NCBI GenBank assembly: GCA_001179505.1
Contig: CDMY01000226.1
Location: forward strand, 96,211-160,210
Length of the DNA stretch: 64,000 nucleotides
Direction of reading: 5' to 3'
Source of the DNA: Vitrella brassicaformis CCMP3155
Lineage: Eukaryota; Protista; Chromerida
Below are positions 2,923-64,000 of the stretch, piece after piece (position 1 is the stretch's first letter; every line of letters starts with the position of its first letter). The translations under genes were made by a program, and so were the position numbers. The notes under the pieces were generated by a model. That model saw nothing but the letters and a program-made list of their open reading frames with translations. It did no database searches and was not told the origin of the DNA.

Positions 2923-3117
2923 ACCGGTTGCCCCTGTGGGCGGGAGGGGCTCCCGAAATGGCCCTCATGCTCAGCTCGTGGGGCAGCTGCAGCTGGAGCT
3001 CCCTTCTGCAATGCACCGATACAAACTGGCATGATGGCTGGAAACCATTCTTACCTACCGATGGTGATTTTGGATGTTTCATCTGCTTGCGCTTTGAGAG
3101 TGAGCTTGCTCAGCTTC

Positions 3118-3127
3118 AAGCTCGCAA
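3118..3127. promoter_or_regulatory. Shared bidirectional-promoter motif (AAGCTCGCAA)
   Basis: Lies between the divergent coiled-coil and PFK genes. The same octamer occurs in the four other divergent gaps. Confidence 0.6.
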
Positions 3128-3278
3128 GTGTTGCCTCTCTGGCAAGAGGGGGAGGAAGCACAAGTACCTCACCGCTGACTCGGCTGGCGCAGATCCACGC
3201 TTGTCTGAGGCAGCGCCGCGGAGATCCCTTTGATTGATTCATCCTGTGCAGGGACTTCGTTGGGTTGGTCTCACCAAG

Positions 3279-6200
3279 ATGCACGAAGAGTTCGAGGTGG
3301 GTAGCAGGTTCACAGCACAGAGAGGTCAGATCATTCAGATCAGTGCAGCAGTGACTCATCACTTGCCTCCTTCCTGCGTGTGTGCCTGTGGGTGTCCTGT
3401 TCGCTGCAGAAGCTGAAGCCGGTGCGGGCCGGCACGATGAACATGAATCTATCGGACGACAAGGCGTTCGGCATGTTCGGGCCGCCCAAGCGGATGTCAT
3501 CCCTGTCGGTGCTGCTGCAGGACAACAGAGAGCTGCTGGCCGTAGGCGAGGAGGAAGGGTCGCCGCAAGCGGCACACGACCGCCGCAGGGCTGTTCGGGA
3601 GGAGTCGCCAGGGACGCCTCAGTACGACTCCGGGCGGGAGAGCCCTCAGCAGCGGTTGACGGGCCACCCGTCGCTGGTGGACCCATTCATGATGCGGAAC
3701 CAAAAGAGGATCCACATGCACTCGGCCGACCTGCAGGACACCTTCTCTCCCGTCCAGAAAGAGCGCCAGCGGTGGAAGCCCTCCCTTCCCACCGCACTCA
3801 AGTCACTCCACGATGTGTCATTCACCGAGGAGGAGCTCACCGAACTGCCGCAGCAGGACACCGAGGCCCTCAAGGCGGACTTCCCAGTCACCTTCGGCCA
3901 GCCATACGTGGAACTCACACACGGCCATGCAGGAGGTGGGTGAGCGAGTCAAGCGACACACACACCAGATTTTAATGGCATCGAACTAGCTACTTACTGT
4001 GTTGGTGTGCTGCGCCCGTGTGCCCGTTCGTCAGGTCACAAGGATCGTCGTCCGTTGCGTGTAGGCCTCGTGCTTTCCGGCGGCCCCGCCCCCGGCGGCC
4101 ACAACGTCATCGCGGGTGTGTATGATTTCATCCACAAGTGGCACCCTGACTCACAGTTCTTCGGCTTCATGGGAGGCGTTGACGGCATCTTCGCCTCAAA
4201 GTACAAGGTAGGTCGGTCAGAGGCACACTTGTGCCGAGTACGCAAGTGTATGCATTCATTCATTCTGCGATGGTTCCTCTGTGTCGATTGGCAGCACGTG
4301 ATGGCCGGTGAGATGGACCGCTTTCGCAACCAGGGAGGCTTTGACATGCTGTGGTCGGGGAGAGGGAAAGTGAGAAACGATGAGGACAAAGCCAGAGCCG
4401 TGGAGGTATACATAGGCACACAGCACCTGAGGACAGCATAGCATGTCCGATTCATATTGATCACTTTGGCTGGCTTTGTGTGAGTAGGTGTGCCGTCGGC
4501 TGGATCTGCACGGGCTGATCGTTGTGGGCGGCGACGGTTCCAACAGCAACGCGGCCCTCCTGGCTGAGCACTTTGGTTCGGCGCTGCCCCAGTGCGCCGT
4601 CATTGGTGTGCCAAAGACAATCGACGGTGACCTCAAGAATGCGGTATGTGCACATGGAGCTTACAGCGACCTGCAGTGACGGCTGGATGTGTGGTGTGGC
4701 TGCAGGTGGTTGAGACGTCATTCGGCTTCGATACGGCGGCAAAGGTCTACTCGGAGCTGATCGGCAACCTCTGCACCGACCTCAGCACAGCGCAGCACTA
4801 TTACCATTTCGTCCGTGTGATGGGCCGTTCTGCGAGTCATTTGGTGCTCGAGTGCGCCATGCAGACGCGGCCGAACATGGTCTTCATCGGAGAGGAAGTC
4901 GAGGCCAAAAACATCGGCCTGTCGGTGAGCAGGTGCACGAAGATCGGCGGACACGTGTGCAGCTGACCGTTATGCGTTGTCATCTGTGTGTGCGTCTGCA
5001 CTGCAGGAGATCGTCGACAGTGTGATCGATTTGATCGTCAGGAGGGCTGCCATGGTGAGCAAAGCGAAGGCCTGCCTCCATAGCTGGCTGCATCCATCCA
5101 CTCGTACCTACCTGGTACGTGTCCATCCTCCTTTTGCTTGTCTGTCTTGTCTTCAGGGGAAGCACTACGGCATCGTGCTTGTGCCTGAGGGTCAGTCAGT
5201 CCAGTCTGGCAGGGCAGCACAGACAGCCATTCTCGCCTCCAACACAACACACACATGTACTGTACGCAACGCATGCTATGCTTCCTGCATGCGTGTATGC
5301 AGGGTTGATCGAGTTCATTCCCGAGATGAAAGTGCTCATTGGTGACCTCAATCGAGTCCTCAAGGAGGGGGTACACACACACACCAACACACCAACACAC
5401 ACGATCACGATGATAAGCAGGTCATGTTCTGATGCTGTCTGCCTGTCGGTCCGTCCCCATTTCTGTTTGGGTGGCCACTCAGGATTTCGACAGGAAGCGT
5501 CTATCTCCGCAGGCGGCCAAGGTGTGGGACTTCCTGCCTGAGAGCATCCAGGAGCAGCTCCTCCTGGACAGAGAGGCCTCTGGCTACATACAAGTAAGGA
5601 AGGTCACACACGCGCACAGACAGACAGACAGACAGACAGCAAATGAGCCAGCCGACAGACATGACCTCTCACTGATTGTGTCTGTCTGTCTGTCTTGTGC
5701 CTTCCTTTTGTCGCATTGCATGGCAGGTTGCCAAGATCGCCACTGAGCGCCTGCTGATTCTGCTCGTCCAGCAGGAGCTGGAGCGCCGCAACATCATGCC
5801 AGACTTCACTGTGATGCCCCACTACTTTGGCTACGAGGGCCGCTGTGCCATGCCGTCAAACTTCGATGCCAACTACTGCTACGCACTGGGACAGACAGCA
5901 GGTGAGAAAACGCATTATGTGTAATGACACGATGAGCTCTATACGATGTGCCTCTCCTTCAGGCGCGCTGATCATGAACAACAAGAACGGCTATATGTCC
6001 GTGGTCCGGTACGCCGACCATCCCACACACACACACACACTCCCTCTGTGTGTGATGTGTGAGTGTAAGCGTGTGTCTTGACTCCCAGTGATTTGTACAA
6101 GCATCCGCGGGAGTGGCGTCCGGCGGGCTGCCCGCTGACTCGAATGATGAAGGTCATCAGCGACGGCAAGAGCACTTTCCCGGGCGTCGAGCGGCGGCTG

Positions 6201-9200
6201 GTCGAGCTCGACAGCCCGCTCTTCAAAGTCCTCGACCAAGTCCGCGATGTCTGGGCCACTGAGGACGTCTACAGATCCCCGGGGCCCATCCAATTCGAGG
6301 GCCCTGTCGCCGACCTGGCCAACTACGCCGTAGCTGTGCCAACGAAGGTGCGACAGATAGACAGAAACAAAACACACGTACCCTTTAAGAAAGCATGCCA
6401 CCTGTTGTCCATGTGACTGGCCGACCTACACTGCAGGAGGAGCTGACATACCCGTCGTGCGACAACCGTGCCTGCAAGAAGGCGGCCTTCCACAAGTCGC
6501 TGGATTGGCTGTCGTCGCTGCAGCGATGGCGGGTGACGATAAGGCCGACCATCCCCGCACTCTGCTCGGACATGAAGGCGCGTGCGCGGCAGACCGACCA
6601 GTACATCCCCAAGGACCCATACACACTCAAGCAGACACTCGTGCACTACCCACACCTCTCAAACAGGTCAATCAATGATACTGCCTGCAGCAGTGAACTC
6701 GCAGACAGCTAGCGCCATCAAGATTGTTTGTGTGCGCTCCCCTCCCTCTCGTCCCTTTCTTTGTTTCTCCCTTCAGGCATCAGTTTTACATTCAGGAGAT
6801 GCAGCACGACAAGTACACTCCCCCCATCTCCCCCGGTCTGCGGATCGGCGTGGTCTTCATGTCGAGACAGGCGCCGGGCGTCATGAACATCCTCTGGGGT
6901 ATCCACGAGCGCCTCAGGCTCGTGCAGGGCACATGCATCGGCTTCTACGGGCTCAACGGGCTGCTCGACTGCAAGTTCTGCGAACTGGAAGAGGACGATC
7001 TCGCCCCATACGTCAACATGGGAGGCATGGAGATCCTCGGCAGGTAGGTGAGATACACTGATTGATGCCTGGATACTCCCGTAGGCTCCGTGCGGCCCGG
7101 CCCGCTGATTATTGATTTCCCTCTGTGCGTCCGGCAGGTCGCTGAGTCACTCGTTGATGCACACAGAGTGCCAGGAGAAGGCGCGCAAGACGTGCGCGGT
7201 AAGCGAGCAGGGTAGAGAGCGTGCGACATGCTGAGGGTCCGGGTATGCTTTGTCGTTGTGTTGGCTGCACTGCAGACCCTCTATCTTGACGGCCTGGTGC
7301 TGGTGGGTTCAGCCTTTGCCATATCTGAGGCGGCCATGCTCACCGAGTACTTTTTGCTGAAGGGCTGCGGGACGTCTGTGATCGGCATCCCCGCCACTGG
7401 CTCCAACAATGTGAAGCACGAGCTGATCGAATGCTGCATCGGCTTCGACTCCACCAGCAAAGTGTATGCGTCTCTGGTGGGCAACATCCTCACCGACGCT
7501 GCGTCGATGCCCAAGTACTGGCACTTCGTCCGCATCATGGGCAGAGACCCCTCGACGGAGGTCAGGCATCACAGCTTTATGTCCATCCATCCATCCATGT
7601 GCTTCTGTCTGTCTGCCTTTTCGTCAGGTGTTGGAGTGCGCCCTCCAGACTCATCCCAACGTGGTGATCATCGGAGAAGAGTATGGCGCAGCAGACAAGA
7701 CACTCGTCCACATCGTCCAGGTACCTACCTGCCCCCCTCCCCCCCCACCCCCNNNNNNNNNNNNNNNNNNNNNNNNNNNNNNNNNNNNNNNNNNNNNNNN
7801 NNNNNNNNNNNNNNNNNNNNNNNNNNNNNNNNNNNNNNNNNNNNNNNNNNNNNNNNNNNNNNNNNNNNNNNNNNNNNNNNNNNNNNNNNNNNNNNNNNNN
7901 NNNNNNNNNNNNNNNNNNNNNNNNNNNNNNNNNNNNNNNNNNNNNNNNNNNNNNNNNNNNNNNNNNNNNNNNNNNNNNNNNNNNNNNNNNNNNNNNNNNN
8001 NNNNNNNNNNNNNNNNNNNNNNNNNNNNNNNNNNNNNNNNNNNNNNNNNNNNCCCCTCCCTCCCCCACCAAACTCACACATCACCTGCGCATGACACATT
8101 TGCTTAGTGGCTGACAATGGCAACCCTTGTTTGTGTGTCAAACAGGACATAGCTGATGTGGTGGTGAAGCGTGCAGAGATGGGCAAAAACTTCGGCACGG
8201 TGTTGATCCCCGAGGGTCTGCTGTCGCACCTGCCCAACATGCGCAACCTGGTGGCCGAGCTCAACCTGGTGCTCAAGGACATGTCGGACAGCGGCCAGCT
8301 GCGCCAGTTCCAGACCAAGATGGTCCACCTGGAGGAGCTCGACGCATCGGAGCTCAGCACCATCACCGACAAGATAGCCCCCTGGAGCCTCGCACTCTTC
8401 AAGTCCTTCCCCAAATTCATCCGACGCGAGTTCCTGCAGCTCGACATGGGCGAGGTCACAGACACAGAGGGAGGGAACGGCAGCCAGACATGCACACAAC
8501 ACGGGCGCCATGTGAGTGTCTTTCTTGGCCAATCTGTGTCATCAGATGCGGTTCACCCACATCGAGACGGAGCAGTTGCTGCGGCAGATGGTGCAGCAGG
8601 AACTGGAGAAGAGACGGTCATACGGCAGGTCAGTCAGTGGCTGAACCTCAGCTTCCTCGCGGACACCAATGGATGGATGATGCCTGAGACCGACATAGAC
8701 CTGAGAGCTTCTCTGGTCGTGTGTGTCAGGTATAGTGGCAAGTTCCAGGCCGTGACTCACTTCTTTGGCTACCAGGGCCGCTCGTCGATGCCCTCAGAGT
8801 TCGACGCACAGCTCGGCTTCACACATGGGTGAGTGAGTCAGTGAGCGAGTGGGTGGCCCACCCAGATGAGGATCTTAGTGTCTGTGTCATCTCATCTATC
8901 AGCCACCTGGCGGCCATGTGTGTTGAGAGCGGTCTGACGGGCTACCTGACGACTGTGAGAGGACTCTGCGGACCCGCGTCTACATGGAAGATGGGAGCCG
9001 TACCCTTTCCGTGCCTCCTCAAGGTGAGCTAAGCTAGCGACATGAATGACACCACACAGACAGAGCACAGAGACAAGAGGACGGACGATATCTATCGGAG
9101 ATGGATTGTGGTGTGTGTCGTGTGCAGGTTCTGCCCCGGTCAGGCGATGAAGTGAATGTCGTCCTGGAGAATGTGCCCCTCGTCCCCTCAGCTGAGGTCG

Positions 9201-9951
9201 ATCTTGAGGGCAAGGCATTCAGGTCAGTCAGTGTCACACACCATTTGGTTGGCGCAAAACCATGACAGCCTGCCTGCACTCGTGTGGCTCCCTCCCCTGT
9301 CTAACCAGATGGATGAAGAACAGCATCTCCGGGTGGGAGATGGAGGATCGGTTCTGCAACCCGGGGCCCATTCAGTTTAGCGGCAGAGCGGCCTCCTTCT
9401 ACAACCGCATACTGCACGAAGAGCAGGCTGAGTACCTCGAGATGCTCAGACACGTAGAGGCTTACACACAAGTCCTACATGACACATGCCGGTAGGTACA
9501 CAACACAACACACACACCCGCACACAGACAGACAGACAAGGGAGAGGGCCAAACAAATCATCATCATCATCTCGCCCTGCCTCCCTCTCTCCCTGCCTGC
9601 GTGTGTGTCAGCTTTGGTGTGGACGAGAATTTCCTCAAGACGGCGTACGTGACGCTCAACTCCCTGCTGACTCTGCGGTTCCATCCCGACGACGTGCTGT
9701 CTTACGGCATCCCGGTCTCGCAGCACCTGTCGGACCACCACCGCCACGAGGCTCTGAGCAACCAACAGGTGCTCATGGGGGCCCTCCGGGCGGCCAAGTC
9801 AGACCGAGCTCACCTGGTGGGCGACAATGACCGAGAGGAGAGCCGCGAACTCTACGACGAGCGCAAGTTCCTCCCGGCCAACGGCAAGCGGCCGCACGGG
9901 GGACAGACAGCCATCGGGCTGTCGCCGGCAAACACTCGGGGCATTCGCTAG
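3279..9951 (+). CDS. PFK: Phosphofructokinase of the PPi-PFK (long) family, with catalytic beta half fused to a degenerate alpha half as in apicomplexans; roughly 20 introns
   Basis: Spliced motifs include [66 protein letters not shown] and HYFGYEGRC. The second half has degenerate equivalents ([34 protein letters not shown]). A short first exon MHEEFE starts at ATG 3279 and the stop is TAG 9949-9951. One intron contains an N gap. Confidence 0.95.
7753..8052. other. Assembly gap (300 N); similar gaps at 14365-14664, 23428-23727 and 60175-60474
   Basis: Runs of N, each abutting a poly-C or poly-G tract. Confidence 0.99.
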
Positions 9952-11374: not shown

Positions 11375-12310
11375 CTAGCCAGTCAGAACGACGGTCTTGC
11401 TGGGGTCCTTGGTGCGGTGGGCCTTCAGACCAGCGGTGCTCGGCAGGCGTGTCTTCTCGAGCTGCTCCTCGGCCACAGCAGCCTCAGTGTTGTCTATCTG
11501 CTGCACAACAGGCTGTGGGGCAGCAGGCGCCTCCTCGATGGTGGGATCACGGTCCTCTTGCTCGCGAGGCTGCTGCTCCTGCTGTGGTTGCTGCTGGTGC
11601 AGGCGGGGGACTGTGATGGTGAGCAACCCGTTGGCGTCAGCCGATGCAAGCACGCCCTGACCTCCCGTGCAGCCGCAGTCTGCGTCACGAGGCAGCTGAA
11701 CACACACACACACACTCTCCTCACCGTTTTATCAGCGCCCCTCTCTGCCTCCCTGCTAACCTGCTCGACGATCTCGAGGATGGAGAGGGAGCCGCCCATG
11801 GCGTCACCGTCGTTGCTGGCGTAGCGGATCCGCAGCATCTTGTCGTGCGACACGGCCACATCCACGTCCTTGTCGTCCACCACACCCGAGCTGCCCACAG
11901 GCAGCTGAATCTGGTATGTGTAGGCCTGGGGGGTCTCGTCGATCAGAGAGAGAGAAGGCACGGAGCCGCGGAAGGCGAAGGGCGAGTGACGGAGGCCGAT
12001 GTTCATGTCCAGGAGGGGTGTGATGGACAGCCGGGGCATCCGGAGGCGGTCCAGGCTGAGCAGAGAAGGCAGCTGCACCGTCAGCTCATCCACGTCGCTG
12101 AATATCGACCTGACGCACAACAGAACACAGCGAACAGGCAGTTCGGGTGTGTACGGTAGGTACGTGAGAACAAGTCCACTCTGTGTGTGGCCAGCACCTG
12201 AAGCTGTCCATGGGGGAGGAGAAGACTGACTTGAGCTGCGCGCTCCGGGCGGCATCGCGCGAGGCGAAGCACGCACCAGCGAGGGACAGCAGAACAAACG
12301 CACGCATCAT
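11375..12310 (-). CDS. Small heat-shock protein (HSP20/alpha-crystallin domain) with N-terminal signal peptide; 3 exons
   Basis: Starts MMRAFVLLSLAGACFA. Core is ...YTYQIQLPVG...DVDVAVSHDKMLRIR...LEIVEQ|LPRDAD...ASADANGLLTITVPR, matching the HSP20 LPxxxD and NGxLxIxVP signatures. The intron 11696-11760 restores the frame. Confidence 0.8.
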
Positions 12311-12433: not shown

Positions 12434-14201
12434 ATGAACGGTGAGTTGAAGGAGGGACTACCCGGCCCCGGTGAGTCGTCAGCCAACCTGAAGGAGGAGA
12501 TGGACACGGCTCAGCAGGACAACAGGGACGAGCAGGACGGCCACCACCCCAACGAGTACGGCGACAGGTACGACGAGAAGGAGCGGGGCGGCGCTGACCG
12601 ATACGACGAGCAGGAGAGGCGCGATGACGACCGAGACCACGACACAGACAGGGGCACTGCGCGACGCAGGGAGGAAGAGGACAACCAAGACGGTTCGTTG
12701 GGAGGAACACACTGGGAGGAGAGGGAGGGAGAGGCCCGACGCACACGGATGGATGTCGTGCATTCTTGTCGTGTCTCTGTGTGCTGTCGTTCTGTTGGGT
12801 CGGTGCGGTACGGTGCAGGGAACGTGTTGTATGTGACGAACCTGCACACCCGTTGTGACCAGAGCCAGCTGATCAAGGAGTTCGACCGTGACTTCAAGGA
12901 CTCCATCACCGACACGAGGGTCGTCCTCAACCCCGTCACCAGGTAAGTCACCCCACGAGACGACAGACAGCCACGGACATGTATGTTCGTGTGCATGCCC
13001 TTGTTGTTGTGTGTTGTGTGTGTTGTGTTGTGTCAGGGAGTCTCGCGGTTTTGCGTTCATATCGTTCACGTCTCCCGCTGAGGCTGACCGAGCCATGCGC
13101 CACATGAACGGCGTCAAGATCATGGGTGCGTACGTACGGCAGACAGCCAGACAGACACGCGACTGACTGACTGACTGACGGGCCTCTGGGCGTGGCGTGT
13201 GAGTGGTGCACTCACTCACTGCGGTGTGTGTGTTCTCGTGTCTTGTGTTGTGGCCTGGCTGTGCTGTCTGTGTGCAGGCAAGGAGATCAAGGTTGAGATA
13301 GCCCGTCGTTCCCGCCCCTACGAGCGCACCCCAGGCACCTACAAGGGCCCTGCATGTAACTAACTGACCAACACCAGCACCCACCACCCAACACCAGCAA
13401 TCAATCACCCACAAGCCAGCATCGATCCATGGAAAGGAGCTGACCCATCTTGGCCCGCCGTGCCCTGTTGTCTGGCTGTGCAGCGGCGAGCATCAAGTAC
13501 GACCGTTACGGACGGATCAAGCCCGAGTTCGCTGACTATGAGGCGCGCATCTCTGGCGGCGGGGGTGCCAGCGTGTTCCCCGCTCCACGGATCATCCAGC
13601 CGCCCCTCGAGGCATACAGCTACAGCAGGGACAGGGGGTCAGCCACCCGCACGGACAGACAGACAGACAGAGGAGAGGCAGGGATACTTCGGGTGGCTGG
13701 GTGTTGGTGGTGTGTGCTGCAGGTACGACCGCGGCTATGACCGCGGCGGGCGGTACGACACCCGCCGCGACGACTACTGGGAGAGTGCACGATACAGGGA
13801 GTACGACGACCGAGACAGAGAGTGAGCCACGTCACACCCGACACAGCACAACAACACAACACCACACATCCCGACGCACATGTGTCTGAGTTGTGTGCCT
13901 CCCTGGTTTGATCCATCTGTTAGTCGTGGTCGTTATCGCGAGGAGGATTACTATCGTGGGGGCTACGACCGGGACCGCGTGAGCTCTCGCTACTACGAGT
14001 ACGACGACCGCAGATACTCAGGCGGAGCCGCCAGATACGATGAACGGTGCGCTTAACAAAGAAGGATGCCAGAGACGGGCTGTTCATGCTTCACCATGTG
14101 TGTGTGTGTGTGAATGTATGTGTGTGTGCAGTGACTATCGTCGTTATGACGACCGAATGATGCGGGGCCGCGAGCGGTCCCGCTCACCCAGACGCTACTA
14201 A
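12434..14201 (+). CDS. Tra2/SR45a-like RRM splicing regulator with RD/RY-rich tail; multi-exon
   Basis: Spliced RRM: NVLYVTNL...RVVLNPVTRESRGFAFISF...MNGVKIMGKEIKVEIARRSRPYERTPGTYKG. The post-RRM RPxxxTPGxYxG linker is typical of Tra2/SR45a. Ends RERSRSPRRY* at TAA 14199-14201. Confidence 0.85.
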
Positions 14202-55785: not shown

Positions 55786-58001
55786 CTACCCATCCTCTCC
55801 CTCATTCCACCCACCTTGGTATCTACTTCTACTCCCCATAACTCTTCGGGGCAGCAGACAACAACTCTGCAAGAACCACACCCAAAACACACACATTTTT
55901 TGTGAGCGAATCCGCCCGCCTCTTTCTCTCTTGCTTTCCCTCCCTCCCTGACCGCTCTCGGTGGCTCTGTAGGGGCTCAGTTGTGGCATGGAACTTGCTA
56001 CCGCACTGACCCCCAGGGGGAACTGCCTGGTGAGAGCAGCTGGTGGTGTGGATGGGTACGGGACGGCCACTGCCACCGGCATGGGCACCCATGCAGTCCC
56101 GCAGTACCATCCAGTGTCGCCCCCGTCGGTCGCCGGCACCAGCATCGCCGGGTCCAGCGACGCTGCAGCCCGCAGCGACAGCCGCGGGGAGGGCGACGTG
56201 GGCAGCGAGTGTGAGTATGCTGGCGGTGGCGCTGGCGGGGGCAGCAGGGGGGGCTGTGGTCCCTGCAGTGGGTGGGGGAGTGGGTCGCTGGGTGTGGATG
56301 GGGGGTAAGGGTACGGCTGCATGGCGCAGGGCGACCCGTCGCTGGGGAAGTCGCGCCCATCGCTGCTCGTGGACGGGTACATCTCCGACGAGCTCGACAT
56401 TTGGATGGTCGACGGCTCCGACGGCAGCAGGCGGTGCCGCCCGGCCGGCCTCACCGGTCCCCCATTTCCGTGCATGCTCCACCGCCTCCCCTTGCCGCGG
56501 GGGAGCGGGGGCAGCAGCAGGTCGCGGGGCGACGAGTTGCCCGATCCTAAGGACGACAGCGGCTGCTTGGTCAGCACCAGGTTGGGCACCGACGACGCGG
56601 GCGAGGCTGTGCCAAACATGGTGGCCGGCGTGCTGGCGCTGTGCCCGAACGGCGATTTGTGGGGGCTGAGGTACTTGACGTCCTCTGTGGATGGCGGCTG
56701 CTTCGGCTTGGCGGGCTGCATCGGGGGACTCGGGGGCGGCGTGCAGATGCGCAGCTGCAGCTGCACAGGTGGCTTGTTGCGGGGTGCCGGTGGGAGAGGG
56801 GGCGCGTGCTTGGGCTGGGGCGTGTGTCTGCAGGTGACCTTGGCGCTGGCCGTGACTGGGGGTGGTGGTGTGGTTGCGCCGTCGCATGAGGATGAGCTGC
56901 TGCTGCACAGGGTGGACGTCGATGTGCTTTGGTCGCTGTTGACTTTGATGATGCGGCCGGAGAACGGAAAACCGGTCGGTAAAGCGTCATTCAACTCGGC
57001 CTCACCGTGGGCCCTGAACACAGACAGGACAGCCAGGCAGGCAGGCAGACACAAAAGATCGATCGATACAGCAAGCCAAATCAGTCCTGAGGGCGTGTGT
57101 CCAGCATACATACCATCTGCAGTCTCTGTTGATGCACTCTCCCTCCAGCCAGTCCTTGCAGACCGCCTTCTTCCGAAACACCCTGCACGACCCACAGTCA
57201 CACACGCAACACAGGAGGATGCATGCGCACATCCCTGCCCTTCGAAAAGGTATCGTCTGTCTGGCTGGTGTCTCTCACGATGTCGCTCGCAGCTCTTCCT
57301 TCGAGTGGGCGTACGTGCACTTGGGATTAGTGCACTTGCCCTCCTGTCACCATGCGGACAGACAGACAGACAGACAGACAGACAGAGAGGAAGCCGTAGT
57401 CATCAGGACAGACAGTCTCATCAATCAATTGTCAGACGGCCATCTGGGTGTTGCGGTGCAGTGTGCTCACCTTGAGTAGCACTGGGCAGAGTGACGTGGC
57501 GCTCAGGTCAGGAGGGCCCCTGCGATCCTCTGGCCCATGAGCAAACCTGATAGCACAGTGACAAAGGGGAAGAGAGAGAGAGAGAGAGGCATATCCACCA
57601 CGGTGCCGATCTCCCTCTCTTTCCCTGCCCATCTGCCTTTCTCCTCCCTCCCTCCCTCCCTCCCTCCCTCGAGAACCCCGGGTGGCTCACTGTGCCGATC
57701 TACTCTGATCTGTCCCCCCTCCCTGTCCTATTGACCACCCCGCCCCTCCACCCCTCACCCACCGGCAATTGGGCCCGAGCGTGCACTTGCCCAGTTTGTA
57801 CCAGCGACACAAGCTGCGCACAACCACAACCACAACCACACCCACGCGCACATCCATCCCGTCCCATCCCCACCATCATAGATCTGCCAGACAGACAAGG
57901 GAGCCAGAGCTGTCCGCCCACCTGGTCTTGTAGAACTGCATGTGGTACAGATTCCGAAAGCCTCCGCCTCCGCCACCCGCGTGCTGTACGTGTTGCGCCA
58001 T
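55786..58001 (-). CDS. Triple CCCH (C3H1) zinc-finger RNA-binding protein with long Pro/Ser-rich tail
   Basis: Spliced fingers: FYKTSLCRWYKLGKCTLGPNCRFAHG, SATSLCPVLLKEGKCTNPKCTYAHS and RKKAVCKDWLEGECINRDCRWAHG. This is the layout of the expanded alveolate C3H1 family. The exact 3' end is uncertain. Confidence 0.85.
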
Positions 58002-58559
58002 GTGTTTGCTCTTCGCTTCCGGCAGCAGTTGTTTGCTCTTCGCTTCCCATCCGCGAGCTTAAGAATACCGTGAAACCCTCAGAACCGTCTGTGTGAATCG
58101 GCGTTCTTTCTTCCATCGAAGATCGACTCGAGGGATCCATGTCTGCAAAAGGCGATGAACGACGGGTGCATTTCGACCCCATTTGCTCTTCACTTTGGCA
58201 TGCAGGACCCACTGCCGCAGAATTAGAGCGTCCTATGCCGCGACTGGCTGCCCCCGTATCGGTGGTTAGGGGGTAGCTCAGATCATTTCCGACAAAAGTA
58301 AAAAATAACCGCGCAGATGGTGTGATTCAATCGGGTGTAGTAACCGGGGGTCCACTCGCAAACGTCGAGAATCTCGACATGCAGGCCCCATTTCGCATGT
58401 GACCCCCACATAATGAAATTGCAGAGAAGCAGCCCACCCAGATTATGTGACACCAATGTGAACCGGCCTGGTGAGAGCCTCTCACACACCAAGCAGCAGC
58501 TCCCCGCTCGGTCACGTTCTTTCACAATTGGCACCCTTCCGACCGCACTCCGTTCTCAG

Positions 58560-58845
58560 CAACCAAAGCACCGCGCCGAACCGCACTAGGCGCATCCGAA
58601 CCGTCACTCAAAGGGCAGTCAATCCAGTCCAACATCATCAACTCACTCACTCTGGGTGGCGAGATATCCTTCACTCAATTCTGTATCACCAATACCAATC
58701 TGACCCACTGCTTTCTCTGCAGTGACTTGACCGACACAAAGCGCACCCGGTGCATCCGAACCGTCTCTCGAAGGGCTATCAATCCACTGGCATCATCATC
58801 ACCTCACTCACTCTGGGTGGCGAGATATCCTTCACTCAATTCGCG
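58560..58845. repeat. Diverged tandem duplication, unit about 160 bp
   Basis: GCATCCGAACCGTC...CTCACTCACTCTGGGTGGCGAGATATCCTTCACTCAATT occurs at about 58592-58680 and again at about 58752-58840. Confidence 0.8.
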
Positions 58846-58876
58846 TGAAACGCGGTTTGTAAACGATTGGTGTTGT

Positions 58877-60174
58877 TTCATTAGATCTGCGGCATGAATG
58901 GCGTTATCAAGGGCCGCACGCGCAATGAGGAGAGAGCCAACAACCATCAAGCTCCTCTCCCCTCTCACCTGCATGGCCGCGCTGTGGTCCGCCAGTGGGA
59001 CGGGCCGGAAGCCGCCGCTGTTGGAGCTGTTGCCGCAGAGCACCATCCTGCCAAGTTAGCCCGCATCCCTCTTGCCGTCGTGTTTGGGGGTGCTCGCTGC
59101 TTCCAGCTTCCGAGTGTCTATTCAGCGAGCGGGTCTTAGTGGAGAATGGAGATGTGAAGTGACGAGGTGGATTGGCTTGGTGGCGATGATCTTCGCTGTG
59201 GTTGAGTGAGAGTGACCGATGATAAAGATGTCAGTCGCTGTGAGCGTCCGTACACACACACTGATAATGGAAAGGACTGTCCGATGCTCAAACAAGCACG
59301 AAAGGGGGAAACGAAGCAACACACAGAGGTCAACCAGTCGGAATAAGGAAGGCGCAAGCGCAAGAAAAAGACAGAGAGACCGTTGCCGGTGGGCTGTCTT
59401 CAACGGTCTCTCCTCCCCTGTCTACTCCCGTCCTGTCTCCCCAACTTTACAAGACGCGACTAAGCTCGCAGGAGGGGCCTCGCAGCGTCTCATTCATATG
59501 CATCAGCACATACACATACACGAATCATACAGACCCAGAGGAGTGAAGGCAGACAGTGCACCCCCAGACAGTACCCAAAGTGCTCGTGCGCTGATGGAGT
59601 GACGAATCACCGGCGATGAGGGATCTTCCCTCCCTTCATCAGCGCAGCGATATACACCACAACATGCACGCAAGGCACCACCTTCCTCATGACAGACTCA
59701 TGATTGATGTGTCATTCCTTGCACCCTGCAACAGTCGGCAGCGTCGGCAAAGGATGGGACGAGATCTTGACCAACGCCGACCGAGCTGAGCAGGACACCT
59801 TTGCTGTCCTCAACGACTGCAGCAGCAGGATGCACTCCTTCCTCACCAAGAAGCGTCTTCCCGCCAACAACTACGTTTCTATTCTGCCCAAGACCACCAA
59901 GAGTGGCGGCATCCAGGAGCATGGGATGGTGCGGCGTGAGTCCATCTCCTGTTCACGTCGGATAGCCATCCAGACCATCGGCTGGATGGATGAGAAGATG
60001 CGCCCCAGCACCAGACACGGGCCGGTGGGTGGGGAGGGCGGTCTCCGAATCGAGCGGCGGGAGAGCAAATACCATCCGACTCCGCCCATGAGTGAGGATC
60101 GTTTCCGGGCGGTGTTCGGCCAGCAGGCCCAGGCTGGCGAGATCCCTGGGTGGGTGCTGTACAGCATCAGGGGG
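58877..60174 (+). pseudogene. Disrupted copy 1 of the lineage-specific gene at 60492-61271 (653-bp insertion plus 27-bp deletion)
   Basis: 58877-59080 matches 60475-60678, and 59734-60174 matches about 60675-61144 with a few substitutions. This copy lacks ACTTTCTGATAGACAAGAAGCGCCTCG and ends at an N gap. Confidence 0.75.
59081..59733. mobile_element. Solo-LTR-like insertion (TG...CA ends, 4-bp target-site duplication GTCG)
   Basis: Flanked by GTCG at 59077-59080 and 59734-59737. Ends are TGTTTGGGGGTGC...GCACCCTGCAACA (10/13 inverted match). The empty site with a single GTCG is at 60675-60678. No ORF of note. Confidence 0.8.
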
Positions 60175-60491
60175 NNNNNNNNNNNNNNNNNNNNNNNNNN
60201 NNNNNNNNNNNNNNNNNNNNNNNNNNNNNNNNNNNNNNNNNNNNNNNNNNNNNNNNNNNNNNNNNNNNNNNNNNNNNNNNNNNNNNNNNNNNNNNNNNNN
60301 NNNNNNNNNNNNNNNNNNNNNNNNNNNNNNNNNNNNNNNNNNNNNNNNNNNNNNNNNNNNNNNNNNNNNNNNNNNNNNNNNNNNNNNNNNNNNNNNNNNN
60401 NNNNNNNNNNNNNNNNNNNNNNNNNNNNNNNNNNNNNNNNNNNNNNNNNNNNNNNNNNNNNNNNNNNNNNNNNNTTCATTAGATCTGCGGC

Positions 60492-61271
60492 ATGAATGGC
60501 GTTATCAAGGGCCGCACGCGCAATGAGGAGAGAGCCAACAACCATCAAGCTCCTTTCCCCTCTCACCTGCATGGCCGCGCTGTGGTCCGCCAGTGGGACG
60601 GCCCGGAAGCCGCCGCTGTTGGAGCTGTTGCCGCAGAGCACCATCCTGCCAAGTTAGCCCGCATCCCTCTTGCCGTCGGCAGCGTCGACTTTCTGATAGA
60701 CAAGAAGCGCCTCGGCAAAGGATGGGACGAGATCTTGACCAATGCCGACCGAGCTGAGCAGGACACCTTTGCTGTCCTCAACGACTGCAGCAGCAGGATG
60801 CACTCCTTCCTCATCAAGAAGCGTCTTCCCGCCAACAACTACGTTTCTATTCTGCCTAAGACCACCAGGAGTGACGGCATCCAGGAGCATGGGATGGTGC
60901 GGCGTGAGTCCATCTCCTGTTCACGTCGGATAGCCATCCAGACCATCGGCTGGATGGATGAGAAGATGCGCCCCAGCACCAGACACGGGCCGGTGGGTGG
61001 GGAGGGCGGTCTCCGCATCGAGCGGCGGGAGAGCAAATACCATCCGACTCCGCCCATGAGTGAGGATCGTTTCCGGGCGGTGTTCGGCCAGCAGGCCCAG
61101 GCTGGCGAGATCCCTGGGTGGGTGCTGTACAGCATCAGGGGGGGGGGGATGGAGGGGGAGGACGCGTTGGCGGTGGTCGGCAGGCTGTTCGGCGCGGCGT
61201 GGATGGCGGATGGACGGGTGCGCAAAGTCCAAGGCGGGAGCTATTGCAAGGTGCATTCTCCGATGGAATAG
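60492..61271 (+). CDS. Lineage-specific hypothetical protein (copy 2, open frame; true 5' end may lie in the gap)
   Basis: 259-aa ORF containing HGMVRRES..SRRIAIQTIG...MSEDRF..VFG...GEIPG. No domain recognised. Confidence 0.5.
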   Translation: MNGVIKGRTRNEERANNHQAPFPSHLHGRAVVRQWDGPEAAAVGAVAAEHHPAKLARIPLAVGSVDFLIDKKRLGKGWDEILTNADRAEQDTFAVLNDCSSRMHSFLIKKRLPANNYVSILPKTTRSDGIQEHGMVRRESISCSRRIAIQTIGWMDEKMRPSTRHGPVGGEGGLRIERRESKYHPTPPMSEDRFRAVFGQQAQAGEIPGWVLYSIRGGGMEGEDALAVVGRLFGAAWMADGRVRKVQGGSYCKVHSPME

Positions 61272-61326
61272 AAGCACGGCATTCATGTGCGTGTTCAAAT
61301 GCATCTCTATCACATTTGCAACGTAC

Positions 61327-63897
61327 CTCCTTCAGTGCGACCAGCGAGGACCGGCATGAGGTTGACAGGCAGTTTGAGTCTGTCACACAGCGCTGCAAAA
61401 CAGCAAACATATGATATTGTACCAGCATCTGGCGGGACTCACTTTGAAGTCTTCGGATAACACGAAGTGCATCTGACCGCTTCCCAGGATTGGCCTTGAT
61501 TCACGCGCGCACCATCTTGTAGGATGTGGTGCGGAGACATATGAGCGCCCAAGTGCCGGACCTCAGGATGATATGCAAGATGTTTGGAGGGTAGTTCGAA
61601 AGCGGGACGCTCGTGAGCAATGGTTGCGAATCTGCCCACGACGCTTAAGATTGCATTTCGTCCTGTGCTTGTGGCGGTCTGCGTGTGGGCAATTACACGC
61701 CAGGACCTCAGAGGCCCTCTGAGTCATCATCACCACATTCCGTGTTGGCCCTCTCAGCTCCTCCACATTGCGGCGCTCGATTAGAGACCCCAACCAGTAT
61801 GTAGTCATGAAGCCGCTGTTGAAGTGCTTCACATTTGCATAGCACCGCTGGCAAGGATTGGCGGCCGCAGACCCGGCGAGACCAAGAATCAGTCCGATCC
61901 ATTTCTGAGACGACACAATAAGACCAGAGACATATCAACTATGTCCGTGTCTCCCGCACCTGGTCACCCAAGATAAAGACATTGAATTTGACCGTCCACA
62001 GTTTCCCTTGAATGTAAGCCTGAAATCCGCGCTGTAGGAGCATGATGTCTTTGTCCAGCCGCTTCATCCATGGCTTGAGTCTGTCATAGTTTTCCGTCCC
62101 GTTCAGCAAAGCAAAGACAAACAGTGAGTGGGAAGAATGGGATGAAAATAAGGGCCCGGTGTCGCTGATGTGTTCAGTGACGACGCGTGCGGCAAGAGTG
62201 ACTGCTTGCTTGTTCTGTCGCATCCTCATTAGTTGGCTGCCGTCACCAGATATGCAAAGTGAGAGAGTGATCTCTCCTTGACCCGTGGTACATTTCTTCT
62301 CTCTCCTCAAATTCACCCGCCACACATCTAACATAACAGCTGGGTGCGTCTTCACAAGCCATTTGAAGAGGTAATATGGACTCGCATACGTGGAAGAGAA
62401 GTGCTCATTGGGGCTGCGGTCCACACGGGCATAGGGAAGGTCAGCCCTCACGTCATCCAAATTCGGGAGATACTCCTCTTCCATCCTCGGCAGGTAGCGT
62501 GCCCTCTCCTCTTGGACGCTCGTCTTCGACGGGACGATTTGTGGTTTGTTAGAATCCTTCACCCACCGAGACATCCCAACCCGTCTCTTGTTGGTGATCA
62601 GATTCTTCATCACTTGTAGTCGGGGCCACCCGATGTGCAGCTTCATTTGCAGGGCGCGCCACAATGACTCGTCGATCTTCCAGTAGGTCTCAGCGAACTT
62701 CTTGCTTAGCCATAAGAGGGCTTTGTGGATGGTCACGGTATGACGTGAATCCTCTCCCAAGCGACCCACTCTCTGAAGAAATCGAATCCACAGACCTCTC
62801 AACACAGCCGCGATAATAGGGGTGGGCCAGATGAATAGAAAAAGGACTATCAAATGCACTACGACAGCTTGGACTGCACTTAGTGTCATGTCAGTACCGC
62901 CATACTCCCATCCTTGTGGACGCTGCGACCCCTTTGGATCAGCCATCCATAGAAGCGCGTCGACCGCCACCTGAGCCCATTTCCGTCGGCGACGATTTCC
63001 AGGGTCGTCTGGATGATCAGGATAAGAGTCGAGAGTCTTGGCAGTTTCCACAAGGGGAACCTCGGCGCTGGTGGTCACTCGAAGCTGCCTCCACTTCTTC
63101 CCCCCACCCTGCCTCCCACCTCCACCCATCTGCTTCTCCCAAATGTCAACTTGGTGGAATCCACCAGCTTTGGAGTCGAGTGCGTAGTTGGTCCGCCGCT
63201 TCAGCTCCCATCCTTCCTCTTCATTTGCGTCTTGGTATGGATTATCGAGTTGCTTCTTTTTCTCTCGTGCGTCTTCATCTCGTGACTCATCGGGGTCCCG
63301 TCCCAGATGGCCTGCGTCCTCCTCAGGCTCCTCGACTAACTCTGAATTATCACCTGCCCCGACGTCCTCCTCAGCATCAAGAAATGAATCGAGTTCATCG
63401 TCCACTTCGACGCCTCTAACATTTCGCAGAGGCAAAGGGTGTCTGGGAAGGGGGGCACCTTTGGATGATGGTGGGGTGGGAAAGGGGCTGTCCACCTCTT
63501 CGTCAGAAGAGAAACGGTCAAACGGGGGAATTCCACCAGAGGCCATCTCTTCCTCATGATCCAGCGATCGGCCAGCAAAGGATTGTGCAGGAGCGGCGGC
63601 GGCGGCGGCGGCTGCTGCGGCGGCTGGTGGGACTACGGCTCTCTGCTTTTCTTCCTCCTCAATCCCGTCTTCCTCCTCCCATTGCAGGCCCCGTCCTGCT
63701 TGAGGCGGAGTTGGTGATAGCTGCATTGGGACGGGGGCCAGTGGAGATATGTGGCGCCGTCGGCGACCTCGAGACCTTTCTCCAAACCCAGCAAGGGGGA
63801 ATTTGTCATCTGGAATGCCGCGGATGTAGGAGGAGAAGCGAGCCCGCCTCTCTAATATATATCCAGCCAGGCCCAGCTGATCAAGGTCTTCATACAC
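61327..63897 (-). mobile_element. Degenerate RAG1/Transib-like DDE transposase gene with spliceosomal introns; C-terminus missing, 5' end probably outside the window
   Basis: In order: LQMKLHIGWPRLQVMK...QIVPSKTSVQEERARYLP; LSLCISGDG (first Asp, 62242-62244); S-x(6)-FALLNGTENYDRL..WMKRL..DI..L..G; VKFNVFILGDQ|KW (second Asp, 61963-61965, then a 55-nt intron); GL.GS....PCQRC; G...QPLL.SVPL....PNILHIILR. There is a frameshift at about 61627 and an in-frame TGA at 61501-61503. Confidence 0.75.
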
Positions 63898-64000
63898 GTG
63901 ATGGCCACACCCCCATGATTGAGTTGGTGATTTCTCGGCTGTTTCTCCTCCTTTTCGGATGAGCGAGCGTGTATCGGACTACACCCAACCCCCTCCACCT

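What the first reader, a model, noticed from the sequence alone, without database searches (positions are those of the whole stretch)
61327..63897. Intron-containing RAG1/Transib-like transposase relic in a unicellular alveolate
Seen in sequence: the 652-aa ORF appears to stop, but a 55-nt GT-AG intron (61905-61959) joins FILGDQ to KWIGLILGLAGSAAANPCQRC. One missing base near 61627 then gives RGQIR-QPLLTSVPLSNYPPNILHIILR, followed by an in-frame TGA (61501), a 50-nt intron (61393-61442) and LCDRLKLPVNL, ending at another donor (61326). Established knowledge: the RAG1 core has this order of motifs: dimerisation helix and QIFQP, KESCDG (D600), NS...PL...DE..E.L, GYDEK (D708), GL..SGS..CTLC (C727/C730), and KG...P......LH (H795). 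The spacing here matches throughout. Inference: this is a decayed member of the RAG1/Transib superfamily. From memory, such elements are mostly known from animals with few non-animal cases, and I know of none described in alveolates. The ZnH2 pair and catalytic Glu are not in this copy, and no TIR is visible in the window.
Basis: partly seen in the sequence, partly recalled or inferred. Interest (0 to 1): 0.88.

Follow-up and report, generated by a model that had tools for sequence, protein, structure and literature searches.

The report
Decayed RAG1-like transposon copy in Vitrella
This is a broken, truncated copy of a jumping gene in the alga Vitrella brassicaformis whose cutting enzyme is a very distant relative of the immune recombinase RAG1; it extends the known host range of this enzyme group to alveolates but is not functional.

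Summary
A 97%-identical second copy in the same genome (L002) independently confirms the 55-nt and 50-nt introns, the 1-base deletion near 61625 and the TGA at 61503-61501. That copy also shows the window copy lost about 1.55 kb after 61310. The lost piece includes the exons with a candidate HxxxxH pair and a candidate catalytic Glu.

The RAG1/Transib reading is supported. Family profiles hit only RAG1 and amphioxus RAG1L in the PDB (E 7.8e-5). D2, CxxC, HxxxxH and E align with RAG1 D708, C727/C730, H937/H942 and E962. A confident model of the nearest intact relative (L006) matches RAG1 at Z 23 and HzTransib at Z 20.6; Hermes scores 9.

Three cautions apply. The same motifs and fold are shared by the whole CACTA-Mirage-Chapaev-Transib (CMCT) clade, so "Transib proper" is likely but not proven. 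No CAC-type ends or 5-bp duplication were found; a third, internally deleted copy carries ~270-bp inverted repeats instead. The region upstream of D1 matches nothing.

All three copies are broken, so this is transposon debris, not a host gene. The scan has already noted other RAG1-like elements elsewhere in this genome. This is a new member of a known kind, of moderate interest.

The parts
63895..64000 (.). High-copy repeat at the contig end. It cuts off the 5' part of the element, or the assembly broke here.
   Evidence: Contig depth jumps from about 40-185 to about 2,600-9,300 at 63868-63950. Paralogue contigs continue differently beyond 63894. The contig ends about 274 bp upstream of the annotated start codon.
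61960..63897 (-). Exon 1 (the 652-aa ORF). It holds a low-complexity N-terminus, a lineage-specific conserved region, and the start of the RNase H-like core. D1 is at 62244-62242 (CISGDGS), the ENYDRL motif follows, and D2 is at 61965-61963 (ILGDQ).
   Evidence: It is 37-47% identical to paralogue P0003 over the whole N-terminal part. hhalign to relatives covers D1-D2-CxxC.
61905..61959 (-). Intron 1, 55 nt, GT..AG, splitting the D2 motif.
   Evidence: The NCBI model P0001 uses it. It is also present in L002. Its removal restores GD-x-K-W-I, which is continuous in relatives.
61443..61904 (-). Exon 2. ZnC2 cysteines are at 61853-61851 and 61844-61842, followed by a Vitrella-specific insert. A 1-nt deletion sits in the A-run at 61625-61624. 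The KPLL..VP..LH motif has its His codon at 61575-61573. A premature TGA lies at 61503-61501.
   Evidence: DNA alignment with L002, tblastn with P0002, and RAG1 alignment of CxxC.
61393..61442 (-). Intron 2, 50 nt, GT..AG.
   Evidence: The P0002 model of the paralogue uses the same splice.
61327..61392 (-). Exon 3 (..LCDRLKLPVNLMPVLAGRTEG).
   Evidence: It is 100% identical to P0002 residues 177-198. The homologous exon is in L003 at 11724-11759.
61309..61326 (-). Start of intron 3 and the deletion junction. About 1,555 bp (L002 1348-2902) are missing, with a 2-nt filler. The exons with candidate HxxxxH and Glu are lost.
   Evidence: Loose ends at 61305 and 61310 in DNA-run contigs continue with L002-type sequence.
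58738..61308 (.). Block unrelated to the transposase. It holds a CA-repeat, a tandemly duplicated segment with an assembly gap of N, and a 259-aa plus-strand ORF with no family hit. It is probably nested or inserted sequence shared with L002.
   Evidence: L002 2903-2983 matches 61308-61228. Direct repeats D1 and D2. No Pfam hit. No counterpart in L003.
58416..58737 (-). Copy of the ~270-bp inverted-repeat arm (plus 56 bp of subterminal sequence) that flanks paralogue L003. It has the orientation expected for the 3' end of this element.
   Evidence: 79-81% identity to L003 13340-13659 and 8831-9098. The L003 arms are 92-97% complementary.

Best explanation
The window holds one dead copy of a multi-copy cut-and-paste DNA transposon family of Vitrella brassicaformis.

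The intact ancestor encoded an intron-containing transposase of about 1,100 aa (length inferred). Its catalytic core has the RAG1/Transib architecture in this order: an RNase H-fold domain with two Asp, a CxxC zinc site 19 residues after the second Asp, a KPLL..VP..LH motif, a helical insertion, an HxxxxH pair, and the third acidic residue.

By analogy with HzTransib and RAG, such an enzyme would bind the element's inverted-repeat ends, nick them, form hairpins on the flanking DNA and reinsert the excised element. This step is inferred, not shown.

The window copy cannot do this. It is cut off at its 5' end and carries a frameshift and a stop codon. It has lost 1.55 kb, including the candidate ZnH2/Glu exons, and contains about 2.5 kb of foreign sequence before its 3' repeat.

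Phylogenetically the family is a very divergent lineage of the CMCT clade. Its detectable affinities are to RAG1/Transib rather than to CACTA-type transposases.
For: Multi-copy and decaying:
- There are three loci in GCA_001179505.1: the window, L002 and L003.
- Each is broken differently. The window has a 1-nt deletion, a TGA and a 1.55-kb deletion. L002 has 9+2-bp and 10-bp deletions. L003 has lost the whole D1-to-LH core.
- DNA runs contain both variant sets.
- L003 is flanked by ~270-bp inverted repeats, and the same repeat lies downstream of the window gene in the matching orientation.

Homology of the window protein:
- An exhaustive HMMER search of 1.8 billion proteins finds only Vitrella paralogues plus P0004 and P0005 (E 7e-4 and 9e-4 library-wide).
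- hhalign of the Vitrella profile against the P0004/L006 clade gives probability 97.6%, E 3e-12 over 146 columns. D1, ENY..L, D2 and CxxC are in register.

Link to RAG1:
- Profiles containing the window protein hit only RAG1 chains at the top of the PDB: E 0.04 with 3 sequences, 0.004 with 18, and 7.8e-5 with the full-length 16-row profile.
- RAG1L 6b40 scores E 0.007.
- The alignments put D2 on the GYDEK Asp and CxxC on C727/C730. They put HxxxxH and E on the YLHKTLAHVP...GNES segment, which holds H937, H942 and E962.
- Pfam RAG1 (PF12940) gives three collinear sub-threshold hits in relatives. Transposase_21 gives none.

Fold:
- The AF2 model of L006 (pLDDT 75, pTM 0.75) gives Foldseek E 5e-10, with ranks 1-49 all RAG1, RAG1L or HzTransib.
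- VIA Z is 23.0 to RAG1 557-979, 20.6 to HzTransib and 20.3 to RAG1L. Hermes scores 9.2.

Language-model features of the window protein itself put a RAG1 cluster first (0.96, 193 shared features).
Against: - No piece of the Vitrella protein reaches any Pfam model, even at E 10.
- The single-sequence model of the window protein failed (pLDDT 37), so the fold evidence comes from a 28%-identical relative.
- The Vitrella C-terminal HLLECH...AHES motif matches relatives only as a 12-residue motif (hhalign probability 0.3%). The exact Glu shifts by 3 columns between alignments.
- Nothing upstream of D1 resembles relatives or RAG1.
- The repeat ends start AAAATTGCAG, not CAC, and no target-site duplication is visible in L003. 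The flanks themselves are repeated elsewhere, so the true termini are uncertain.
- The fold match to CACTA-type clusters is nearly as good as to RAG1 clusters (TM 0.67 against 0.71).
- Transcription and splicing are not shown by reads.
Confidence: 0.8

Rival explanations
1. The family belongs to another branch of the CMCT clade rather than to Transib/RAG1. Candidates are CACTA/EnSpm, Mirage, Chapaev, Plavaka, ESTA, Lanisha, or a separate unnamed lineage. The RAG1 hits then arise only because RAG1, RAG1L and HzTransib are the only solved structures of that clade.
For: - All CMCT lineages share C(2)C and H(3-4)H between D2 and E. ESTA transposases also hit RAG1 in HHpred (PMC12730594).
- Atlas fold search gives Transposase_21 clusters TM 0.67 against 0.71 for RAG1 clusters. 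Feature searches list Transposase_21 clusters at 0.84-0.92.
- Repeat ends are not CACNNTG and no 5-bp TSD is seen.
- The closest clusters carry DUF1280 or no name, not a Transib label.
Against: - No member hits Pfam Transposase_21, even at E 10, while three relatives give collinear weak hits to Pfam RAG1.
- RAG1 clusters outrank Transposase_21 clusters in both feature searches.
- The D2-to-CxxC spacing (19) and the H-x4-H then +20 to E spacing in relatives are identical to RAG1.
- The KPLL..VP..LH motif aligns with the RAG1 and RAG1L segment after ZnC2.
Confidence: 0.3
2. The locus is a domesticated, transposase-derived host gene, or a small host gene family, rather than transposon debris. The apparent defects would be assembly errors or recent pseudogenisation.
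For: - The gene has spliceosomal introns and an annotated model.
- The long N-terminal region is conserved between paralogues at 37-47% protein identity.
- A 161-nt contig identical to the ORF occurs in a run labelled as possibly RNA.
- At 61501 the laid contigs of two DNA runs show C (TGG) rather than the window's T.
Against: - Three loci carry three different sets of frame-breaking lesions, including loss of the entire catalytic core in L003 and of the C-terminal exons in the window.
- The lesions of both near-identical copies are seen in independent DNA-run contigs.
- L003 is bounded by long inverted repeats.
- The surroundings are repeat-rich, with a gypsy-type pol gene on L003.
- The contigs showing TGG carry other L002-type variants, so they come from the paralogue.
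Confidence: 0.07
3. The resemblance to RAG1 is a chance collection of short motifs in an unrelated protein.
For: Direct single-sequence searches of the window protein against Pfam and the PDB are blank.
Against: - The profile-profile link to relatives has E 3e-12.
- The profile-to-RAG1 search has E 7.8e-5, with two collinear segments holding all catalytic and zinc residues.
- Z 23 over 342 residues for the relative's model.
- Every top PDB hit in three profile searches is RAG1.
Confidence: 0.02

Closest known systems
Transib transposases (e.g. HzTransib, PDB 6PQN/6PQX) and the RAG1 core
   Same: - The motif order is the same: D1 (SGDG), acidic E-x-Y/H-x-x-L helix, D2, CxxC 19 residues later, K-P-L/F..VP..LH, helical insertion, HxxxxH, and catalytic Glu 20 residues later in relatives.
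- A relative's model superposes on RAG1 557-979 (Z 23) and HzTransib 88-452 (Z 20.6).
- It is a single-ORF element without a RAG2-like gene, as in Transib.
   Different: - Sequence identity is about 13-16%.
- There is no Pfam-level match.
- The gene is interrupted by short spliceosomal introns.
- A lineage-specific N-terminal region of about 440 aa has no detectable NBD or dimerisation-domain similarity.
- There is an extra insert of about 25-30 aa between CxxC and LH.
- The candidate ends are ~270-bp inverted repeats that do not start with CAC, and no 5-bp TSD is seen.
Unnamed/DUF1280-type RAG1-fold transposase clade (P0004 family; L006; AFDB A7SJ52, A0A8B6G6L9, D2W5M3, A0A1X6P905 and others)
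   Same: These are the nearest detectable sequence relatives of the Vitrella core (hhalign E 3e-12). They share the same D1/ENY/D2/CxxC/LH motifs. They are also found mostly as stop- and frameshift-bearing copies in large eukaryotic contigs.
   Different: - They are intron-less in the loci examined.
- Their N-terminal region is different.
- They lack the Vitrella insert.
- Identity to Vitrella is only 22-33%.
RAG-like (ProtoRAG/RAGL) transposons, including AanRAGL of the pelagophyte Aureococcus (PMC9435367)
   Same: They are RAG1-fold transposases in invertebrates and in a unicellular alga of the SAR supergroup. RAG1L 6b40 is hit by the family profile (E 0.007) and by the model (Z 20.3).
   Different: - No RAG2-like (kelch) partner is present. 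Neighbouring called genes have no family hits.
- No asymmetric heptamer-type TIRs were found.
- No 5-bp TSD was found.
CMC superfamily (CACTA/EnSpm, Mirage, Chapaev; Pfam Transposase_21)
   Same: It has the same overall DDE plus C(2)C plus H(3-4)H architecture and a similar predicted fold (TM 0.67).
   Different: - No Transposase_21 hit in any member.
- It ranks lower than RAG1 families in feature searches.
- No CACTA-type termini were found.

Membership tests
RAG1/Transib superfamily | Two catalytic Asp on an RNase H-like fold (RAG1 D600, D708) | tested here: met
   D1 lies at 62244-62242 in CISGDGS and D2 at 61965-61963 in ILGDQ. D2 aligns with the RAG1 GYDEK Asp in HMMER alignments. D1 aligns with the SGDG Asp of relatives, and the relative's model covers RAG1 557-979. 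D1-to-D600 equivalence is by range, not residue-level.
RAG1/Transib superfamily | CxxC zinc ligands directly after D2 (RAG1 C727/C730) | tested here: met
   NPCQRC lies 19 residues after D2, the same spacing as RAG1. It aligns with YICTLC.
RAG1/Transib superfamily | HxxxxH zinc ligands and third catalytic acidic residue about 20 residues later (RAG1 H937/H942/E962) | tested here: inconclusive
   These are absent from the window, because they lie in the deleted 1.55 kb. Paralogues L002 and L003 have PSMHLLECHV...MQAHES-x-N. This aligns with the HxxxxH/E of relatives in MAFFT, but hhalign is not significant. In relatives L006, L008 and L012 the motif is clear and aligns with RAG1 H/H/E.
RAG1/Transib superfamily | Statistically supported sequence similarity to the RAG1/Transib core | tested here: met
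   The similarity is seen only at profile level. The family profile with Vitrella rows scores E 7.8e-5 against zebrafish RAG1 and 0.007 against RAG1L. Single sequences and Pfam curated cut-offs are not reached.
RAG1/Transib superfamily | RAG1/Transib three-dimensional fold including the helical insertion domain | tested here: met
   This is shown for the relative L006 (28% identical to the window core). Foldseek gives E 5e-10 with the top 49 hits all RAG1, RAG1L or HzTransib, and VIA gives Z 23. The window protein's own model was unusable.
RAG1/Transib superfamily | Terminal inverted repeats beginning 5'-CACNNTG | tested here: not met
   The only inverted repeats found (L003 8831-9098 / 13396-13660; window 58416-58681) begin AAAATTGCAG. 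The true termini are uncertain because the flanks are themselves repeated.
RAG1/Transib superfamily | 5-bp target-site duplication | tested here: inconclusive
   There is no matching 5-mer directly outside the L003 repeat arms (..ACATACAT / CACGACCC..). A GACCC on both sides is offset unequally and may be chance. The window lacks its 5' end.
RAG-like (RAG1L+RAG2L) transposons | Adjacent RAG2-like kelch gene | tested here: not met
   Neighbouring called genes in the window, L002 and L003 have no Pfam family. The small convergent ORF shared by L002 and L003 is about 90-126 aa and no better conserved than the DNA.
CMC (CACTA/EnSpm-Mirage-Chapaev) | Sequence match to the CACTA-type transposase domain (Pfam Transposase_21) | tested here: not met
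   No hit at E up to 10 in any Vitrella piece or relative. Feature and fold searches rank such clusters below RAG1 clusters.
hAT superfamily | hAT fold (Hermes-like insertion domain) | tested here: not met
   Hermes scores Z 9.2 and Foldseek E 0.05, against Z 23 and E 5e-10 for RAG1.

The most novel reading that the evidence does not exclude
The Vitrella family represents a deep, previously undescribed lineage of the CMCT clade that sits outside both classical Transib and CMC. Its proposed distinguishing features are spliceosomal introns, a unique N-terminal module of about 440 aa, ~270-bp inverted-repeat ends, and a preference for inserting at one position of another repeat. The same flank sequence abuts the repeat arm in the window and in L003, in opposite orientations. 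If true, it would bear on how early the RAG1-type core diversified in eukaryotes.
Probability: 0.25. Interest if true: 0.6.

Novelty: new member of a known kind. Interest (0 to 1): 0.42.

Why it matters
RAG1, the enzyme that assembles antibody and T-cell receptor genes, descends from Transib-type transposases. How old and how widespread that enzyme type is remains an active question.

Published surveys report RAG-like or Transib elements in animals, fungi, plants, a pelagophyte alga and bacteria (PMC9435367). I found no paper that holds both "Transib" and "Vitrella". That survey's text and supplements do not contain Vitrella, Chromera, Symbiodinium or Alveolata.

A chromerid family therefore adds an alveolate data point. 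It is a very divergent sequence that could help root trees of the CMCT clade.

The value is limited. This copy is dead. The family's ends are unresolved. The placement on the Transib side rather than elsewhere in CMCT is not proven. The scan has already recorded other RAG1-like elements elsewhere in this genome.

Tried and rejected
- Single-sequence Pfam and PDB searches of every piece were blank.
- Word-indexed homologue searches with the window protein or a 3-row alignment found only Vitrella proteins and P0005.
- AF2 of the window protein alone gave pLDDT 37 and was unusable.
- The profile of the Vitrella C-terminal ORFs did not find RAG1 against the PDB. hhalign of the C-terminal and N-terminal Vitrella profiles against relatives was not significant.
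- The metagenome scan gave a single relative, L006. The first attempt failed for lack of a conserved block.
- MAFFT repeatedly misplaced C-terminal fragments on the D1 motif (SGQGVEK against SGDGAK). The row set had to be tuned before folding.
- RNA evidence was sought, but only DNA-like contigs and one 161-nt contig in a possible RNA run were found. No splice joints were seen.
- TSD and CAC termini were sought at the L003 repeat ends and at the window's 3' repeat and not found.
- Rfam found nothing in 57000-64000.
- The 259-aa plus-strand ORF and the small convergent ORF were considered as a RAG2-like partner and rejected.
- One literature search was badly framed and uninformative. Yuan & Wessler 2011 is not held.
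Full report
**Source.** The window is the end of contig CDMY01000226.1 of Vitrella brassicaformis CCMP3155 (GCA_001179505.1). The only database protein matching the ORF is the NCBI model P0001 (702 aa). Its locus starts 274 bp from the contig end. Nothing therefore exists beyond about 64000 in which to look for a 5' end.

**Observation.**
- The 652-aa minus-strand ORF (61939..63897) is there.
- Reading the minus strand..FILGDQ ends at 61960. A GT..AG interval occupies 61959-61905 (55 nt), and KWIGLILGLAGSAAANPCQRC starts at 61904.
- P0001 uses exactly this splice.
- An exhaustive HMMER search of 1.84 billion representative proteins returned two more Vitrella proteins, P0002 and P0003. Their contigs were fetched as L002 and L003.
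- L002 (2,983 bp) is 96.9% identical to window 62676-61310. It reads through the places where the window is broken.
- The window lacks one A at 61625-61624. It has TGA at 61503-61501 where L002 has TGG.
- The window shares the 50-nt intron 61442-61393 and the exon ending at 61327 before a GT donor.

- Relative to L002, the window lost about 1,555 bp (L002 1348-2902) right after 61310, with a 2-nt filler.
- L002 is itself broken by 9+2-bp and 10-bp deletions.
- The divergent paralogue L003 (P0003, 37-47% protein identity in the N-terminal half) keeps D1 (CISGDGSELMRMRHNK). About 40 bp after that homology ends, it resumes at the LKLP-type exon, so the whole core is gone.
- Contigs of public DNA runs carry the lesions of both near-identical copies. 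They also show loose ends at the deletion junction.
- Three loci with three different sets of disabling lesions indicate neutral decay of a repeated element.

**Candidate zinc and catalytic motifs in the paralogues.**
- The part deleted from the window contains an open frame in L002 (1836-2336) and in L003 (12294-12779).
- This frame carries PSMHLLECHV, then about 25 residues, then MQAHES-x-N.
- It is a candidate HxxxxH plus catalytic Glu.

**Relatives.**
- Besides the paralogues, one search gave two weak but library-wide significant hits, P0004 and P0005 (E 7e-4 and 9e-4).
- P0004 belongs to a family of decayed copies in large eukaryotic contigs.
- A metagenome scan gave L006, a 548-aa uninterrupted ORF.
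- All of these share the following motifs:
  - SGDG (D1)
  - E-N-Y-x-x-L
  - GGDMKF (D2)
  - CPxC
  - G-x-K-x-PLL..VPD-x-LH
  - Y-x-H-x-L-V-Y-H-V-P, with Glu exactly 20 residues after the second His (GQGVEK-x-ND)
- hhalign of a Vitrella-only profile against this clade gives probability 97.6%, E 3e-12 over 146 columns. D1, ENY..L, D2 and CxxC are in register.
- The Vitrella C-terminal motif aligns with the HxxxxH/E block in MAFFT. hhalign supports only the 12-residue His motif.
- The Vitrella region upstream of D1 matches nothing.

**Link to RAG1 by sequence.**
- Profiles that include the window protein were searched against all PDB sequences.
- With 3 rows, the top 12 hits are all RAG1 (best E 0.04). 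With 18 rows, the top 13 are RAG1 (E 0.004). With the 16-row full-length profile, the top 12 are RAG1 or RAG1L. Zebrafish RAG1 scores E 7.8e-5 and amphioxus RAG1L E 0.007.
- The printed alignments put the family's acidic E-N-Y..L on DESDHETL. They put D2 on the Asp of GYDEK and CxxC on YICTLC.
- A second collinear segment puts HxxxxH on YLHKTLAHVP. It puts the family's Glu on the Glu 20 residues after the second His, which is E962 in mouse numbering.
- Pfam gives nothing above threshold. Three relatives give collinear weak hits to PF12940 RAG1: E 0.0035 and 0.016 on the H/H/E block, and 0.021 on the D2 block. None hits Transposase_21.

**Link to RAG1 by fold.**
- The window protein folded alone was unusable (pLDDT 37).
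- L006 residues 1-412 were folded with alignment A10, which contains the Vitrella pieces. This gave pLDDT 75 and pTM 0.75.
- Foldseek against the PDB puts RAG1, BbRAG1L and HzTransib at ranks 1-49 (E 5e-10 to 5e-3). Hermes follows at E 0.05.
- VIA-align gives Z 23.0 to mouse RAG1 557-979 (342 residues, 3.4 Å), Z 20.6 to HzTransib, Z 20.3 to RAG1L and Z 9.2 to Hermes.
- The language-model feature search of the window protein itself also ranks a RAG1 cluster first (0.96, 193 shared features).

**Limit of that conclusion.**
- In that paper, ESTA transposases also hit RAG1 in HHpred. The author groups these lineages as the CMCT clade, mostly with 5'-CA..TG-3' termini and 2-5-bp TSDs.
- In my searches RAG1, RAG1L and HzTransib were the only transposases scoring above Hermes in the PDB. 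PDB hits therefore cannot separate Transib from the rest of the clade.
- The Atlas fold search gives RAG1 clusters TM 0.71 and a Transposase_21 cluster TM 0.67.
- The evidence that tips towards Transib/RAG1 is modest:
  - Pfam RAG1 hits but no Transposase_21 hits
  - the higher rank of RAG1 families in feature searches
  - spacings identical to RAG1 (D2 +19 to Cys; His +20 to Glu)
- I put the family on the Transib/RAG1 side with roughly 0.55-0.6 probability. I put it in the CMCT clade with about 0.95.

**Element structure.**
- L003 carries inverted repeats 8831-9098 and 13396-13660 (about 270 bp, 92-97% complementary) around the deleted gene.
- The window has the same repeat at 58416-58681 (81%), plus 56 bp of subterminal homology. 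Its orientation matches the 3' arm relative to the gene.
- Between it and the gene lie about 2.5 kb that L003 lacks. This block holds a CA-repeat, a tandem duplication with an N gap, and a 259-aa ORF with no family. Its first 81 bp are shared with L002.
- The arms start AAAATTGCAG, not CAC, and I see no TSD.
- The sequence just outside the arm is itself repeated. Window 58329-58413 matches L003 15008-15095, and part of it matches the L003 left flank.
- The true termini may therefore lie elsewhere, or the element may prefer one target repeat. This remains open.

**Expression.** Only a 161-nt contig (62590-62750) in a run flagged as possibly RNA matches. There are no splice joints. The introns rest on the annotators' models, on GT-AG boundaries and on restoration of conserved motifs.

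**Literature and novelty.**
- No paper in the library holds both "Transib" and "Vitrella".
- Tao et al. 2022 (PMC9435367) report RAG-like transposons in the pelagophyte Aureococcus and Transib in fungi, plants and bacteria. Its text and supplements do not mention Vitrella, Chromera, Symbiodinium or Alveolata.
- The AFDB search shows unnamed proteins of the same fold under many accessions.
- Earlier notes of this scan (s1-248662, s1-199300) describe other RAG1-like elements elsewhere in this genome. The scan has thus found this kind of thing before, on other DNA.

**Verdict.** This is a real, correctly read, dead copy of a very divergent RAG1-fold transposon family. It is a new member of a known kind.

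Noticed in passing
window 63895-64000: The last ~100 bp of the window (and contig) are a high-copy repeat. Contig depth in three DNA runs rises about 50-100-fold. Paralogue contigs continue with different sequence beyond 63894. No Rfam family matches and there is no second copy in the window.
   Followed up: partly
window 58877-61271: A tandemly duplicated block (59741-60040 = 60709-61008 at 98%; 58877-59080 = 60475-60678 at 99%) is interrupted by a run of N. It carries a 259-aa plus-strand ORF that NCBI calls a gene. The ORF has no Pfam family.
   Followed up: partly
window 58546-58842: The inner part of the inverted-repeat arm is itself duplicated at about 160-bp spacing (81-nt and 52-nt units, 73-96% identical).
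   Followed up: no
window 58329-58413; L003 15008-15095 and 8790-8830: The sequence immediately outside the repeat arm is itself a repeat. In L003 it also occurs 1.3 kb away, followed by a ~35-bp stretch faintly like the arm's first bases and then the right-flank sequence (CACGACCCCCC). This could be a preferred target, a footprint, or an extremely deleted copy.
   Followed up: partly
L002 2480-2860 (-) and L003 12993-13265 (-): A small ORF convergent with the transposase is called in both paralogues. It is 74% identical over 53 aa, which is no more than the DNA identity (78%). This region is deleted from the window.
   Followed up: partly
window ~62900-62790 (P0001 residues ~280-318): A strongly hydrophobic stretch of about 35 residues (..AVVVHLIVLFLFIWPTPIIAAVL..) is conserved in paralogue P0003. 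This is odd for a transposase and its role is unknown.
   Followed up: no
L003 1-732: A gypsy-type pol gene (RT_RNaseH, integrase, chromodomain) lies about 8 kb upstream of the L003 copy, so that contig is also repeat-rich.
   Followed up: no
L008, L009, L012 (ENA eukaryotic contigs): The nearest non-Vitrella relatives are themselves decayed copies, each with one stop or one frameshift. They end in a basic tail followed by an L-x-V-x-E-L-K..L motif resembling a SAP DNA-binding domain. One AFDB hit is named "SAP domain-containing protein".
   Followed up: no
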